From: Antechinus flavipes
Lineage: Eukaryota
Assembly: GCF_016432865.1 (NCBI RefSeq)
Contig: NC_067399.1
Location: 57,102,001 to 57,166,000 of the forward strand
Direction of reading: 5' to 3'
Length of the DNA stretch: 64,000 nt
Shown here: positions 9,268 to 63,478 of the stretch, piece after piece
Layout of the letters: every line of letters starts with the position of its first letter
How positions within the stretch are numbered: position 1 is the stretch's first letter
Made by a program: the position numbers and the translations under genes
Notes under the pieces: generated by a model
The model's input: only the letters and a program-made list of their open reading frames with translations
Databases searched by the model: none
Told to the model about the DNA's origin: nothing

Positions 9268-9276
9268 GCCTACCTT
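9268..9276 (-). other. GSE1: 5' splice donor ending the giant exon (AAG|GTAGGC)
   Basis: Plus strand 9268-9276 gcctacctt reads AAG|GTAGGC on the minus strand, at the end of conserved-looking protein sequence. Confidence 0.75.
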
Positions 9277-11847
9277 GTGTGTAGCTGCTGGGGAGGCCCT
9301 GACCAGCACTCCCGGATGGCTCAGGGCTTTGCCGGCAAACACCACGGTGCCACACTCCACACAAGCCCCAATGATCAGCTGCTTGCCATCATCCACCAGC
9401 AAACTGTGCCCGGCTCTCAGGGTGTAGAGAAACATGGGCAGGCGGGCCACACGCACTGCTTTTAATCCAAGACATCGCTTTTTCTCCTGCTGGCAGAAGA
9501 AGCACACGAAGGTCTCCACTTTGTACTGCCTGGACCAGGCGCTGATGGGGTGGTGGGAGCTTCTGCCTTCGTGCTGCAGCCACTGTCCTAGCAGGTCGTG
9601 GTAGCAGAGCACACAGGTGGCCACCAGCCCTGTGGAGTCAGCGGGCCTGGCCCGGGGGGCCGGAGGATACACCGTAAGGAATGGGAAGAAAGGTTCCTTC
9701 TCCCCAAAGCGGCTTGGAGGGTTCACGTTGAGCTGAAACTCCTTCCCAGGCCCCAGCTCGGCCCCACAGATGTAGCACACAGACAACGGGCCCCCCTTCA
9801 CTGAGGGATGCACCGCTAGCCCCCCAGGATCAGTGAGTGAAAACACCTGATGGTATCGCCCCAGGAAACTCTGCACCGAGTTTATGAGCTCCTCATTCTG
9901 GCAGGCCCTGTACATGGACCAAATATCTTCCAGCACCCCATAGCACTTGGGGCAGCTGCGGACTTCCCAGTGCCTGTTAAGTCCTTTGGCATTGGGTGGA
10001 CAAGGCAGGAGATTCACAAAAGGGAAATGCATGGTGTTCTTGGCACTACCATTGATGATCCTGGTGGGCACTGTCCGGGAATCCTGGGCACAGTCCTCCC
10101 CACAGAGGTAGCAGGCCTCCTGCTGAGGCCCAGCAGGGGCTCCCTCTTCCTTCAGAGGCCTCCTCCCTTTGGAAGACATCCCTGGATTCAGAGGCACCAC
10201 ATAAAGCCTCTGCAGAACTGGCACGTTGGCCAGTTCAAAGCTTTGCCACTGTTGCATGAGGGAGGAGAAACAGCAGGAGCACACCAGGGTGCTGCCCCCA
10301 GGGCTGATGGGCAGGGCCCCCGGGGGTGGGCTGTGCAGCCACAGGAAAGGAAAGAAAGGGGCCTGTGCCGTCTTCTCCTGCTTCTGAACGTGAATCTGGT
10401 GCTGAGAGGCCAGGCTTAGGAGGTTGCCACAGATATAGCAGCAGGTGTGCTCTGGGGTAGGAGCCCAGGGGTCTTGGGACCCCGGATTATTGCTACTCCC
10501 ATTCTCCTTGTCTGCCAGGCCACCGCCACTTTTCGGGGCAACCTCCCAGCGACTACAAGGGTTGGGGAAAGTCTGCTTCTTCTGGTCTTCCTCATCACTG
10601 GTGATGTTGATCTCGCCTTCCTCGGAGGTCCCACAGCCCCCGTGACTTTCAGGACGTGGCTTGGGACCCGGGGTTTGGGATGTCCTCCCCTGGTTGATGG
10701 CCGAGAAGCCGATGTTATTTTTCAGGCCATCCCCCGGCGGGCACTGGAAAGGGGGTCCCCTCCAGTTGCCCTGAATGCCCCTCAGGACACTGGGGCTGTC
10801 TTCGGGGACCCAGTGCGTGGGTGTTCCTTTTTTCTTCCTCCTGGTGCCCATTTTGCGCCCGGGATCGGGCTGCCCTGTTGGCCCCTCCACACTCGATTCT
10901 GCGGGGAGGGTGTTCTCTGAGCCAGAGTGCGTTGAGGGGATTGCAGAGGGAGGCCACTCTCTGAACCGGCCCACAAGCACCCCTGTCCCGGGTCCGCGGA
11001 GGACGCCCTGGGGAGCGGCCATGGGCGGCTTGAGCAGCTGGGGACCCCCGCCTGCTTCCTTCGATGGGGGCGGACCGTAGCCTGGGCTTCCCTGGTCCCT
11101 GGGGGCCGGGCCTGGGGCGGGCTCAGGCTCCGAGAGATGGTCTGTGTCGGAGAGGGAAGACAAGTCCGAATCGTGCGCCTCCTCCTGGGGAGGGCGGGCG
11201 CCCCTCCTCGCGCTGCCGTCTCCTACGGCCCCCTCCCCTTCGTCGTCGTCCTCGTCGTCGTCCTCTTCGCCCGGCTCCAGGGCGTAGGAGAGGTTCCACT
11301 CCTGGGGGGCCGCGGCGCGGCGGCCCGGAGCGCCCCCGCCCGCCTCGCACTGGTAGGGCCGCTTGAGCCAGTACATGCGCTTCTCCACGGGGGTCCTGGA
11401 GCGCTCGAACGCTGCCCACTGCTCGCCCAGGAAGCAGCGGCAAACCGCGCACACCAGCACGCAGCCGTCCGCTGGGGACACTTCCCGAGCGCCGGGCGCC
11501 GGCTCCTGCTGCTGCAGGAAGGGGAAGAAGGGCTGGCCTTGCAGGCTGCCCCCGGGCCCGGCCGCTCCGGCCCCAGAGCCGGCCGCCTCTCCGCGCCCCG
11601 GCGCCGGCTGCTTTACCTGCAGTTTCAGCTCCTTGCCGCGGCCGATCCCCCCGCCGCAGATGAAACACGAGAGCGGAGCCGCCGCCTGGCCCCCGCTGCC
11701 GCTGCCGGGGGGCTTCTCGGGGCCGCCGCCGCCGCCGGCCCCTGGGGCCGCCGGCCCCAGGCTCTCGCTGCCGGACGCGATGGCTGCCATGAGCCGCTGC
11801 TTACGGGAGATCGGGGGCTCCTTCTCCAGTTCGCTCCTCTTGTCCAT
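9274..11847 (-). CDS. GSE1: Large first coding exon (858 codons from ATG 11847, phase 0) of the GSE1 long isoform; Plexus-like N-terminal region with five C4 (CxxC...CxxC) modules
   Basis: Frame is open from 12150 to 9103. First in-frame ATG is at 11847 (MDKRSELEKEPP); the track's start at 11958 is GTG. A strong donor AAG|GTAGGC follows codon K (9276-9274), and the 57 read-through codons after it look intronic. Five repeats C[YF][IL]C...[PH]FFPF[LV]...P[AP]P.A...CxxCxxxLxxQW; an acidic tract (EEDDDEDDDE); a basic NLS-like RRKKK. Gene identity is from recall of the distal giant exon of vertebrate GSE1 and Drosophila plexus, not from a search. Confidence 0.78.
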
Positions 11848-12800
11848 GGGGCGCTCAGACGTCCGCGGGGGCAGCAGTCCGGGCTTTGCGCACCGAGGCC
11901 GGCGCCTGCTCCCGGGCTGTGGGCGCTCTGCGTCCTCGGTGGAGCCGCCTCCATGCACCGAGTGTCCGGGGCGCAGTGTCTTTCCCGGCCGGCGCGCGGG
12001 GGGCGGGAAGGGGGGGCCGGAGCTAGAGACGATCCGCTTGCAAAAGTTTGTGTCTCCGTGCTTGTGAGTGAGTGTGAGTGTGTGAGTGAGTGTGAGCAGT
12101 GTGTTTTCGCCGGGGACGGCTCCCCCCCTCCCCCCGCTCCTCCCTCTCCGTTAGGCTGTGATTGGCGCTGCGGGGAAGGAGCTGATTGCTCTCCTGCTCT
12201 GGCCCCGGAGATCCTGGGACGCTTTGGCAATAAATATATCTTTAATGGGTTTTAATCCGCCGGCTCGAGCGCTCCCCGCCGCCGGAGAGTCTGCCTCGCC
12301 CCCCTTCCCGGAGCCCGCCCGCTCTTTTATTCCGGCGCGGCAGCTAACTTTGTCCATGTGTGCCTCTCGCAAAGTTTGGCTGCGGGCTCGGCGGCAGCGC
12401 CATCGCCATCCTCGCCGGGTCACCACTCGGCTTCCTCCAGGGGCGGCTGCGGCGGCTCCACGAGGTCAGCGCCCGCCCCCCTCTTCCCCTCCGGGCCTCT
12501 GCCGGGCCGCCCTGGCCAGCCGGCTTCCCGGCGCGGGAGGCTCCCGGCGGCCAGCCCAGCTAGAGCGCTCCGGAGATCTGGCAGCCCCCCGGGAAGCGCC
12601 GCGCGCACTGAAGCCGCCCGAGCCGCAGCCGCAGCGGCAGCATGTGCTCGGCCCGGAGCCTGCCAAATCGTTTGGTCATTTCAGTTGGTTGGTTGGTTGG
12701 CTGGGGCGGGGAGGCACGGGGGGAGGGGAGGAGAGGGGGTAGGAAAGAGAGTTGGGGGAGGGGAGAAGAGGTGGAATCCCTCCTGCTAGAAACTCGAGGG
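10880..12800. promoter_or_regulatory. CpG island / promoter of the minus-strand gene
   Basis: Very high GC and CpG density against a CpG-depleted background. CCAAT on the minus strand at 12161-12165, GC box ggggcgggg at 12703-12711, (GTGA/GT)n at 12063-12103, G-tract clusters. Confidence 0.85.
11625..11954 (-). other. Overlapping upstream ORF (109 aa, MEAAPPRTQ...) out of frame with the main CDS
   Basis: ATG at 11954-11952 (ggtgcATGG) is in the frame of the tracked ORF 11625..12230; it stops at 11625, past the main ATG at 11847. Confidence 0.55.
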
Positions 12801-51276: not shown

Positions 51277-52340
51277 TTCTCTGTCTCTGTCTCTCTTTCT
51301 TCTCTCTTTCTCTATCTGCTCTCTCTCTTTCTCTGTCTCTTTCTCTCTCTCTGTTTCTGTGTATCTCTGTTTTCCTCTGTGTGTATGTCCCNNNNNNNNN
51401 NNNNNNNNNNNNNNNNNNNNNNNNNNNNNNNNNNNNNNNNNNNNNNNNNNNNNNNNNNNNNNNNNNNNNNNNNNNNNNNNNNNNNNNNNNNNNNNNNNNN
51501 NNNNNNNNNNNNNNNNNNNNNNNNNNNNNNNNNNNNNNNNNATGTCTCCCTCTCTGTGTCTCTCTTTCTCTCTTTACTTTCTTTCTCTCTTTCTTTCTCG
51601 TGTCTCTGTGTCTTTCTTCTTTCTTTCTCTATCTTTCTCTGTCTCTTTCTCTCTGTCTCTGTTTTTGTGTATCTCTGTTTTCCTCTGTGTGTATGTCTCC
51701 CTCTCTGTGTCTCTCTTTCTCTCTTTACTTTCTTTCTCTCTTTCTTTCTCTGTCTGTCTGTCTCTCTTTCTCTCTTTCTTTCTCTGTCTCTGTTTTTGGG
51801 TATCTCTGTTTTCCTCTGTGTGTATGTCTCCCTCTCTGTGTCTCTTTTTCTTCTCTTTCTCTCTTTACTTTCTTTCTCTGTCTCTCTGTTTTCCTCTGTA
51901 TGTCTCTCCCTCTCTGTCTTTCCATGTCTGTCTGTCTCTCTTTCTTCTTTCTTTCTCTTTCTCTCTTTCTTTCTCTGTCTCTTTCTGTCTGTTTTCCTCT
52001 GTGTGTATGTCTCCCTCTCTGTGTCTCTTTGTCTTCTCTCTTTCTCACTTTACTTTCTTTCTCTGTCTCTTTGTTTTCCTCTGTATGTCTCTCCCTCTCT
52101 GTCTTTCTATGTCTGTCTGTCTCTCTTTCTTCTCTCTTTCTCTCTTTACTTTCTCTCTCTTTCTCTATCTCTTTGTTTCTCTGTGCAACTCTGTTTTTCT
52201 CTGTGTCTCTCCCCCTCTCTTTCCCTCCCTGTCTCTCCCTGTCTATCTTTCCTTCTGTCTCTCTTTCCCCTTCTTTCTTTTTCTTCCTCCCTCTTCCTCC
52301 TTTTTATCTTTCTTTCCCTCTCTCTTTTCTCCCCCTTTGT
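51277..52340 (+). repeat. Compound CT-rich minisatellite / polypyrimidine array containing a 150-N gap (51392-51541)
   Basis: Recurrent ctgttttcctctgtgtgtatgtctccctctctgtgtctct blocks. Confidence 0.9.
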
Positions 52341-62696: not shown

Positions 62697-63478
62697 TTAA
62701 GGTTTACCTGAATTATCTCATTTAGTATCTAATATAATTTAATATCTAATGTAATAATATATAAATTTAGTGTCTATATAATATCTAAGATTTATCTATA
62801 TCATCTCATTTAGTGTCTGATATAAGTTAATATCTAATATAATAATATATAAATTTAATATCTACATAATATCTAAGATTCACCTATATTATCTCATTTA
62901 GTATCTAATATAATTTAATATCTAATGTAAAAATATATAAATTTAATGTTTATATAATATCTAAGGTTTATCTATATCATCTCATTTAGTGTCTGATATA
63001 AGTTAATATCTAATTTAATAGTATATAAATTTAATCTCTATATAATATCTAAGATTCACCTATATTATTTCATTTAGTGTCTGATATAATTTAATAACTA
63101 ATATAATAAAATATAATTTTAATATCTATATCTTATCTAAGGTTTATTTATATTATCTCATCTAGTATCTGAGATAGTTTAATCTCTAATACAATAGTAT
63201 ATAAATTTAATATCTATATAATATCTAAGGTTCAACTATATTATCTCATTTAGTGTCTGATACAATTTAATAGTTAATGTAATAATATATGAATTTAATA
63301 TCTTTATCATATCTAAGGTTCATCTATATTATCTCAATTAGTGTCATATAATTTAATAGCTAACATAATACTATATAAATTTAATATCTGTATAGTATCT
63401 AAGGATTATATTATCTCATTTTATATCTGATAGAATTTAATATCTATATAATATCTAAGGTTCACCTATATTATTTCA
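62697..63478 (+). repeat. AT-rich 88-bp minisatellite (~9 copies) embedded in a MIR
   Basis: atctaag recurs at 62783, 62871, 62959, 63047, 63135, 63223, 63311 (88-bp spacing), then 63397 and 63453. Confidence 0.95.

What the first reader, a model, noticed from the sequence alone, without database searches (positions are those of the whole stretch)
9352..11667. Five tandem C4 modules, possibly ZAD-like zinc domains, in the giant Plexus-like first exon of GSE1
Residue numbers count from the track start at 11958. The exon encodes five copies of one module: R1 aa98-196 (11667-11371), R2 aa507-586 (10440-10201), R3 aa616-683 (10113-9910), R4 aa728-812 (9777-9523) and a divergent R5 aa819-869 (9504-9352). 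Each has CxxC, then 68/49/49/50/43 residues with a PFFPFL...PxPxA core, then CxxC-x3-L-x2-[QI]W-x2-[FYH] (seen in sequence; R5 lacks the PFFPFL core and the QW helix). The spacing and the C-terminal amphipathic helix resemble the ZAD (zf-AD) treble-clef dimerisation domain, which is mainly an insect domain (inference). GSE1 is established as a subunit of the LSD1-CoREST-HDAC complex, but the commonly studied short protein lacks this region. The long form could therefore add a multivalent zinc-domain array to a chromatin repressor scaffold, shared with Drosophila Plexus. This is the most likely under-described system in the window.
Basis: partly seen in the sequence, partly recalled or inferred. 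Interest (0 to 1): 0.85.

Follow-up and report, generated by a model that had tools for sequence, protein, structure and literature searches.

The report
Zinc-module array in long GSE1 exon
This marsupial window holds the 858-codon first coding exon of the long form of the chromatin co-repressor GSE1; it encodes five copies of an ancient four-cysteine zinc module shared with fly Plexus, a real and conserved domain that gene models already predict but that has no family entry, solved structure or known function.

Summary
Window 11847-9274 (minus strand) is one open exon of 858 codons. It has ten CxxC motifs arranged as five modules. R1 to R4 are clearly repeats of one unit, and R5 is a degenerate copy.

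The GSE1/Plexus reading is supported.
- The exon is 90% identical over its whole length to residues 1-859 of a tammar wallaby RefSeq model, "GSE1 isoform X3" (2124 aa). That model continues into canonical GSE1 with Pfam DUF3736.
- The same layout, an array followed by DUF3736, is found from annelids, priapulids, spiders and amphioxus to sharks, frogs, turtles, birds and mammals. Cnidarians have the array but no DUF3736 match above threshold.
- A fly protein annotated px (Plexus) has the same modules in the same order.
- All module cysteines are invariant or nearly so. dN/dS is about 0.10-0.15.

AlphaFold2 gives a confident treble-clef zinc domain (pLDDT 90).

The ZAD idea holds only as a loose structural analogy. 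ZAD structures are among the nearest folds (TM 0.37-0.54, Z 2.4-3.3), but they rank no better than FYVE, GATA or HNH. No sequence or profile test links the module to zf-AD.

The domain has no Pfam family. Function is inferred: a multivalent interaction or targeting platform on the LSD1-CoREST-HDAC scaffold. The finding is real and under-studied, but not a new kind of system.

The parts
9274..11847 (-). First coding exon of the long GSE1 isoform: 858 codons, ending in phase 0.
   Evidence: ORF. ATG and splice donor read in the sequence. 90% identity to wallaby GSE1 X3 residues 1-859. 338 homologues at E<=1e-3.
11845..11847 (-). Start codon.
   Evidence: Orthologues from shark, frog, fish and gecko begin a few residues before the conserved SRKxRLMAA motif. 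The wallaby model starts at the same Met.
11779..11817 (-). Conserved N-terminal motif P-x-SRK-x-RLMAA (aa 11-23).
   Evidence: Alignment A4.
11353..11679 (-). Module R1 (aa 57-165). Cys 61, 64, 133, 136. It has a longer Gly/Ala-rich insert than the other modules.
10453..11352 (-). Low-complexity linker of about 300 aa (aa 166-465), rich in Gly, Pro and Ser, with acidic runs.
   Evidence: Composition. The linker is much shorter in the alligator and bird-like loci.
10189..10452 (-). Module R2 (aa 466-553). Cys 470, 473, 523, 526. Closest of the window modules to the family consensus.
   Evidence: AlphaFold2 model with pLDDT 90 and pTM 0.81.
9853..10125 (-). Module R3 (aa 575-665). Cys 579, 582, 632, 635. 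Core reads HFPFV, helix reads IW.
9511..9789 (-). Module R4 (aa 687-779). Cys 691, 694, 745, 748.
9313..9510 (-). Module R5 (aa 780-845). Cys 782, 785, 829, 832. A degenerate copy that directly abuts R4.
   Evidence: Cysteines invariant or nearly invariant in A2. Same order of secondary-structure elements in the array model. Collinear with the fly px protein.
9272..9273 (-). Splice-donor GT (AAG|GTAGGC).
   Evidence: The mole-rat (Fukomys) protein alignment stops exactly at 9274. The wallaby protein changes to next-exon sequence after the same Lys.

Best explanation
Window 11847-9274 (minus strand) is the first coding exon of the ancestral long form of GSE1, the vertebrate orthologue of Drosophila Plexus.

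The exon encodes:
- a short conserved N-terminal motif;
- one zinc module (R1);
- a disordered linker of about 300 residues;
- four more modules (R2 to R5).

Each module is a domain of about 85-95 residues that binds one zinc ion through two CxxC pairs. The first pair sits in a beta-hairpin knuckle. The second pair sits at the start of a helix of about 16 residues that carries L-x2-QW. A short FPF(L) helix and a Pro-rich loop pack between the two pairs. This is a treble-clef arrangement.

In the long protein, the array is followed by about 60 residues and then the whole canonical GSE1 (with DUF3736), which is a subunit of the LSD1-CoREST-HDAC1/2 complex.

Shown:
- the exon, the modules and their conservation;
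- purifying selection;
- the predicted fold;
- fusion to the GSE1 body in gene models of close and distant species.

Inferred: the five modules act as independent beads that bind partner proteins. Self-association or nucleic-acid binding are less likely alternatives. Through these modules the long isoform would target or cross-link the CoREST repressor complex.
For: Coding exon and repeats:
- The exon is open for 858 codons.
- The modules are significant repeats.
- 338 homologues were found, each with 4-7 modules.

Conservation and selection:
- All 16 Cys of R2-R5 are invariant or nearly invariant in 52 orthologues, from vertebrates to invertebrates.
- In 148 non-redundant module instances the 4 Cys are invariant, and F38, P39, L69, Q72, W73, R86 and Y88 are at least 90% conserved.
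- dN/dS for R2-R5 is 0.10-0.15 against mole-rat (Fukomys), bird-like, alligator and frog-like loci.

Fold:
- The AlphaFold2 array model has pLDDT 84.
- The single-module model has pLDDT 90 and pTM 0.81. It shows a knuckle, a strand, a short helix, a strand, then CxxC at the start of a helix.
- The nearest solved folds are all treble clefs.

Link to GSE1 and Plexus:
- Array plus DUF3736 occur in one protein in frog, shark, amphioxus, spider, annelid and priapulid.
- The same is true in wallaby, pika, turtle and emu (scanned), and by precomputed Pfam in more mammals, turtles, birds and coelacanth.
- The window exon is 90% identical to wallaby GSE1 X3 residues 1-859.
- A fly px protein shares the modules in the same order.
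- In flies, loss of Lsd1 or CoRest turns intervein cells into vein (Curtis et al., as cited in PMC7601384). Loss of functional px gives ectopic veins (PMC13322080).
Against: - No other GSE1 exon lies in the window, so splicing to the GSE1 body cannot be shown for this genome.
- Several amniote and fish annotations call the array a separate 'uncharacterized LOC' with no DUF3736. An array-only product is therefore not excluded.
- The long isoforms are computational RefSeq models; I saw no transcript or peptide evidence.
- Zinc binding and the partner-binding function are inferred, not measured.
- Model coordinates could not be inspected, so the zinc-site geometry was not checked.
- The modules are mildly basic on average (mean net charge +2.9), so nucleic-acid binding is not ruled out.
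Confidence: 0.75

Rival explanations
1. The modules are true ZAD (zf-AD) domains, or their direct evolutionary relatives. They work as ZADs do, by homodimerising through the C-terminal helix. Long GSE1 would then be a self-associating, multivalent scaffold.
For: - Same Cys4 pattern and similar spacing, and the same order of elements: knuckle, short helix, CxxC, long helix.
- Six different ZAD crystal structures appear among the VIA matches at Z 2.4-3.3.
- 7poh and 1pzw appear in the Foldseek list at TM 0.37-0.43.
- The best non-family match in the ESM Atlas shape search is a ZNF276 zf-AD cluster, with TM 0.54, 74 residues aligned and rmsd 3.7 A.
Against: - There is no zf-AD Pfam hit for the exon or its modules. 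zf-AD is not among the 25 families listed for 148 module instances at E<=1, so it matched at most 2 of them.
- The module profile finds no ZAD chain among PDB sequences at E<=10.
- FYVE (Z 3.6), endonuclease VII (3.5) and GATA (3.4) score as well or better, and no match reaches Z 4.
- The context differs. Here there are five tandem copies and no C2H2 array. From general knowledge, not tested here, a ZAD is usually a single N-terminal domain ahead of C2H2 fingers.
- Dimerisation was not testable.
Confidence: 0.12
2. The modules are nucleic-acid-binding zinc fingers, like the GATA-type or ribosomal treble clefs. They would tether the CoREST complex directly to DNA or RNA.
For: - GATA DNA-binding fingers and ribosomal zinc proteins are among the nearest folds.
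- The mean net charge of 148 modules is +2.9, with an invariant Arg and basic positions after the helix.
- Plexus is described as a nuclear-matrix protein that represses vein development (title of Matakatsu et al. 1999, cited in PMC13322080).
Against: - Window modules R2-R4 are near neutral (pI 6.9-7.3).
- Only one basic position (R86) is invariant, and there is no conserved basic patch.
- The fold matches are weak (Z below 4) and cover only the generic zinc core.
Confidence: 0.15
3. In mammals the array exon has become a separate gene, or an array-only isoform. It would no longer be part of the functional GSE1 protein.
For: - Models in bushbaby (Otolemur), mole-rat (Fukomys), gecko, turtle, starling and several fish hold the array but no DUF3736.
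- The bushbaby model spans 149 kb yet adds only 119 residues that are not GSE1.
Against: - Newer RefSeq models join the array to the GSE1 body in wallaby, pika, whale, rodents, anteater, hare, turtles and birds.
- Pelodiscus (softshell turtle) has both kinds of model (P0017 and P0204), so the split models look like annotation artefacts.
- The donor site and its phase match the wallaby model's junction.
- The wallaby model runs from the exon through about 60 residues into the canonical GSE1 start.
Confidence: 0.15

Closest known systems
Drosophila Plexus (px) cysteine-rich motifs (Matakatsu et al. 1999, Development 126:5207, as cited in PMC13322080)
   Same: - Same module, with CxxC, an FPF core, then CxxC-x3-L-x2-QW.
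- Same tandem arrangement, including the abutting last two modules.
- A fly protein annotated px matches the family at E 1e-76, and matches the window exon collinearly.
   Different: - The fly protein tested (P0187, from the gall fly Eurosta) shows no DUF3736 hit.
- Only the fly protein has genetic data, on wing-vein repression.
- The D. melanogaster sequence itself was not examined here.
RefSeq-predicted long GSE1 isoforms, for example tammar wallaby isoform X3 (2124 aa)
   Same: - 90% identity over all 858 residues, with the same start and the same exon end.
- DUF3736 lies downstream, at residues 1643-1784.
   Different: These are computational models from other species. The canonical studied protein starts at MSHEPKS, downstream of this exon (plus general knowledge of GSE1).
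ZAD / zf-AD (PF07776), for example Grauzone 1PZW and ZNF276 7PPP
   Same: C4 treble clef with a long C-terminal helix and similar Cys spacing. It is among the nearest folds.
   Different: - No sequence or profile similarity.
- TM at most 0.54 and Z at most 3.3.
- The FPF helix and Pro-rich loop are specific to this family.
- Here there are five tandem copies and no C2H2 fingers.
- This family reaches Cnidaria.
MYM-type (zf-FCS) finger arrays of ZMYM2 and ZMYM3
   Same: Tandem arrays of C4 zinc modules. The multi-module model hits ZMYM2/3/4 in AFDB Swiss-Prot at E 6e-4 to 5e-2. From my general knowledge, not checked here, ZMYM2 and ZMYM3 co-purify with LSD1-CoREST-HDAC.
   Different: - TM is only about 0.1, because the match reflects a string of small zinc domains rather than a shared domain fold.
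- There is no zf-FCS Pfam hit.
- Only 5 of 148 modules touch the related zf-FLZ model, and only weakly.

Membership tests
GSE1/Plexus N-terminal cysteine-rich module family (no Pfam entry) | Two CxxC pairs 43-68 residues apart, invariant across the family. | tested here: met
GSE1/Plexus N-terminal cysteine-rich module family (no Pfam entry) | An FPF(L) core and an L-x2-QW helix after the second CxxC, followed by P-x3-R-x-Y. | tested here: met
   Present in R1, R2 and R4. R3 keeps a variant (HFPFV, IW). R5 lacks them.
GSE1/Plexus N-terminal cysteine-rich module family (no Pfam entry) | Significant sequence similarity to the arrays of proteins named GSE1 and px. | tested here: met
GSE1 (long isoform) | The array and DUF3736 (PF12540) lie in one polypeptide. 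| not testable with these tools
   No DUF3736 exon lies in the window. The feature is met in the 90%-identical wallaby model and in many other species.
ZAD / zf-AD (PF07776) | A match to the zf-AD profile. | tested here: not met
   No hit for the exon or its modules at E<=10. zf-AD is not among the 25 families listed for 148 modules, so it matched at most 2 of them. No ZAD chain was found by the module profile.
ZAD / zf-AD (PF07776) | C4 treble-clef head with a long C-terminal helix. | tested here: inconclusive
   The topology agrees. Superpositions are weak: TM 0.37-0.54, Z 2.4-3.3, no better than FYVE, GATA or HNH.
ZAD / zf-AD (PF07776) | A single N-terminal domain ahead of a C2H2 zinc-finger array. 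| tested here: not met
   Five tandem copies. No C2H2 family passes threshold in the exon or in the long orthologues.
ZAD / zf-AD (PF07776) | Homodimerisation. | not testable with these tools
   No multimer prediction or assay was available.
MYM-type / FCS zinc finger (PF06467) | A match to the zf-FCS profile. | tested here: not met
   No zf-FCS hit. Only weak zf-FLZ hits in 5 of 148 modules.

The most novel reading that the evidence does not exclude
This reading combines three claims:
- The roughly 2100-residue protein with five zinc modules is the ancestral, still-functional form of GSE1 in mammals. The studied 1200-residue protein is a derived internal-promoter isoform.
- The modules form an uncatalogued treble-clef family, present in cnidarians and bilaterians, that gives the LSD1-CoREST-HDAC complex its targeting or clustering.
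- ZAD may be an arthropod offshoot of this older module.

The probability given is for the conjunction of a functional long isoform with array-dependent targeting. The ZAD-offshoot part alone is about 0.1.
Probability: 0.35. Interest if true: 0.7.

Novelty: new member of a known kind. Interest (0 to 1): 0.5.

Why it matters
None of the GSE1 papers opened or listed here mentions this N-terminal array. Yet it is the most conserved part of the family outside DUF3736. It is found from cnidarians to mammals and is under strong purifying selection.

If the long isoform is made, it adds five independent zinc modules to a histone demethylase/deacetylase scaffold. That offers a concrete handle on two open questions: how CoREST complexes containing GSE1 are recruited, and why loss of fly px gives the same kind of ectopic-vein phenotype as loss of Lsd1 or CoRest.

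The work also defines a domain that could be added to family databases. The consensus is C-[YF]-x-C-G, then P-F-F-P-F-L, then P-P-x-G-A-x-P, then C-x2-C-x3-L-x2-Q-W-x2-[YF]-E, then P-x3-R-x-Y.

Tried and rejected
- Pfam on the exon and each module found nothing, zf-AD included.
- A PDB sequence search with the exon and with the module profile found nothing.
- Fold search with the four-module model gave only diffuse hits, to ZMYM and LIM arrays and to generic zinc ribbons. It was not informative, so I modelled one module alone.
- I looked for later GSE1 exons in the window with frog, shark and wallaby proteins and with the tails of amniote models, including a low-stringency search. None was found.
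- The C-terminal tails of the 'uncharacterized LOC' models do not match GSE1. Four of them, from a bushbaby, another probable eutherian, a turtle and a gecko, share a short segment that looks like the next small exon.
- The Logan contigs L002 and L004 read through the donor into a stop, so they give no information on splicing.
- Literature searches for GSE1 with Plexus, for KIAA0182, and for long GSE1 isoforms found no paper on this array. Matakatsu et al. 1999 is not held in the library.
- Rfam found nothing in the window.
- The search of earlier findings returned nothing.
- I did not build a ZAD alignment for profile-profile comparison, because no tool supplied ZAD sequences and typing them from memory is unreliable.
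Full report
**What is in the sequence**

The minus strand carries an ORF from 11958 to 9100. Three observations fix the true coding exon at 11847-9274, which is 858 codons ending in phase 0.
- Orthologue N-termini place the start at the ATG at 11847. Shark, frog, fish and gecko proteins begin a few residues before a shared P-x-SRK-x-RLMAA motif. The wallaby model begins at the same Met.
- A donor, AAG|GTAGGC, lies at 9274/9273.
- The mole-rat (Fukomys) protein alignment stops exactly at 9274, and the wallaby protein switches to next-exon sequence after the same Lys.

The exon sits in a GC-rich block (67.5% GC at 10-12 kb).

**The repeats**

- Ten CxxC motifs start at aa 61/133, 470/523, 579/632, 691/745 and 782/829. 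The gaps within pairs are 68, 49, 49, 50 and 43 residues.
- Shuffling the protein gives 1.15 CxxC motifs on average. None of 20000 shuffles reaches 10.
- R1, R2 and R4 match one another at E 1e-11 to 1e-15. R3 matches R2 and R4 at 2e-4 and 8e-6.
- R5 is not significant in pairwise comparison. It does align to the last module of the invertebrate orthologues, which the module HMM recognises. Its four Cys are invariant or nearly so.

**What it is**

An exhaustive HMMER search gave 338 homologues at E<=1e-3, each with 4-7 copies of the module.

The long homologues carry the array at the N-terminus and Pfam DUF3736 (PF12540) towards the C-terminus. This holds for frog and shark proteins named GSE1, and for amphioxus, a spider, an annelid and a priapulid.

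A word-indexed search seeded with the spider protein extended the family to molluscs, echinoderms and cnidarians (Nematostella, Exaiptasia, Hydra). It also reached a fly protein annotated px, at E 1e-76. BLASTP of the window exon against that px protein is collinear across R3-R4-R5, including the abutting last two modules.

A search seeded with the frog array returned RefSeq long GSE1 isoforms that hold both the array and PF12540. They come from tammar wallaby, pika, a whale, several rodents, an anteater, a hare, turtles, birds and coelacanth (four of them confirmed by Pfam).

The window exon is 90% identical over all 858 residues to wallaby GSE1 isoform X3 residues 1-859. In that model the exon is followed by about 60 residues, then the MSHEPKS start of the canonical short protein, with DUF3736 at 1643-1784.

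The window is therefore from a marsupial, and the exon is the first coding exon of the long GSE1 form. None of the later exons is in the window, so splicing in this genome is inferred from the close orthologue.

**Is it functional coding sequence?**

- All 16 Cys of R2-R5 are invariant or at least 90% conserved in 52 orthologues, from vertebrates to invertebrates.
- In 148 non-redundant module instances the four Cys are invariant. F38, P39, L69, Q72, W73, R86 and Y88 are at least 90% conserved.
- Nei-Gojobori dN/dS for R2-R5 is 0.10-0.15 between the window and mole-rat, bird-like, alligator and frog-like loci. dS is near saturation at 1.3-1.8, so these ratios are rough.
- The linker between R1 and R2 is low-complexity and about 300 residues long here. 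It is only about 70-110 residues in the alligator and bird-like loci. Amphioxus has an extra module in that interval.

**Fold**

AlphaFold2 on the R2-R5 array with 52 orthologues gave mean pLDDT 84.3. The low-confidence stretches fall only in the linkers, and pTM is 0.50, which fits independent beads.

R2 alone, with 148 module instances as its alignment, gave pLDDT 90.0 and pTM 0.81. The order of elements is:
- the first CxxC in a hairpin knuckle;
- a strand;
- a short helix on FPFL;
- a Pro-rich loop;
- a strand leading into the second CxxC, at the start of a 16-residue helix.

This is the treble-clef arrangement. I could not read the coordinates, so the zinc geometry itself is unchecked.

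**Comparison with known folds and families**

- Pfam has no family for the exon, for its modules, or for 148 family modules scanned one by one. Only scattered sub-threshold zinc-motif hits appear, and zf-AD is not among the 25 families listed.
- The module profile finds no PDB sequence.
- In AlphaFold DB clusters, the only significant matches (E 8.5e-17 to 9e-4) look like members of this family: several are named GSE1, and the rest share 24-35% identity and TM 0.69-0.91 with the model. After them E jumps to 0.14.
- Foldseek against the PDB gives nothing at E<=1e-3. ZAD entries 7poh and 1pzw sit at ranks 5 and 15, with TM 0.37-0.43.
- VIA-align over 48161 chains gives a best Z of 3.6 (a FYVE domain). 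Then come Lsr2 at 3.6, endonuclease VII at 3.5, GATA1 at 3.4, Grauzone ZAD at 3.3, and five more ZADs at 2.4-3.0.
- In the ESM Atlas shape search the best non-family match is a ZNF276 zf-AD cluster, at TM 0.54 with 74 residues aligned.

Taken together, ZAD is a reasonable structural analogue. It has the same class, a similar size and a similar C-terminal helix. It does not stand out from other treble clefs, and no sequence-level test supports membership. The context also differs: five tandem copies, no C2H2 fingers, and a family older than arthropods.

**How it probably works**

Shown: a conserved array of five zinc modules at the N-terminus of a protein whose C-terminal part is GSE1.

From the literature:
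- GSE1 associates with LSD1 and its complex (PMC8830420).
- In flies, Lsd1 or CoRest mutant intervein cells adopt vein fate (Curtis et al., as cited in PMC7601384).
- Loss of functional px gives ectopic veins. The px1 allele truncates the protein before the cysteine-rich motifs (PMC13322080).

Inferred: the modules are separate interaction units that recruit partners to the CoREST complex or cross-link it. I favour protein binding for two reasons. Window modules R2-R4 are near neutral (pI 6.9-7.3), and only one basic position is invariant. Nucleic-acid binding and ZAD-like self-association remain open.

**Novelty**

The cysteine-rich motifs of Plexus were described in 1999 (as cited in PMC13322080). 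Long GSE1 isoforms are already predicted in RefSeq. The exon itself is therefore not new.

What is missing is a domain family entry, a structure, and any study of the long vertebrate isoform. None of the searches I ran in the held library turned up a paper on it. Many annotations still split the array off as an 'uncharacterized LOC'.

I rate it a new member of a known but uncharacterised kind, of moderate interest.

Noticed in passing
window 11779-11817 (-): A conserved N-terminal motif, P-x-SRK-x-RLMAA, lies just after the start codon. It is shared by shark, frog, fish, gecko and marsupial GSE1 long forms. Its function is unknown.
   Followed up: partly
window 10453-11352 (-): The R1-R2 linker is about 300 residues here, rich in Gly, Pro and Ser with poly-acidic runs. 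It is only about 70-110 residues in the alligator (L003) and bird-like (L002) loci. Amphioxus and many invertebrates carry an extra module in this interval, so vertebrates seem to have lost one module.
   Followed up: partly
L001 (mole-rat, Fukomys) and protein P0001 (bushbaby, Otolemur): Module R1 was not found in the mole-rat locus, and it is missing from the bushbaby model. I cannot tell whether this is an assembly gap in GC-rich sequence or a real loss.
   Followed up: no
tails of proteins P0001, P0002, P0017 and P0160, after the giant exon: A weakly conserved segment of about 40-65 residues (x-S-x-x-L-E-x-P...) follows the giant exon in a bushbaby, another probable eutherian, a turtle and a gecko. 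It matches the wallaby next-exon sequence in character. It is not present in the window.
   Followed up: partly
window 51542-52331: A TC-rich low-complexity or tandem tract next to an N run. It explains the strong negative GC and AT skew at 50-54 kb.
   Followed up: no
window 62698-63453: An AT-rich tandem repeat with an 88-bp unit, 8.7 copies and 83% matches.
   Followed up: no
window 11848-11958 (-): The reading frame stays open for 37 codons upstream of the ATG.
   Followed up: yes
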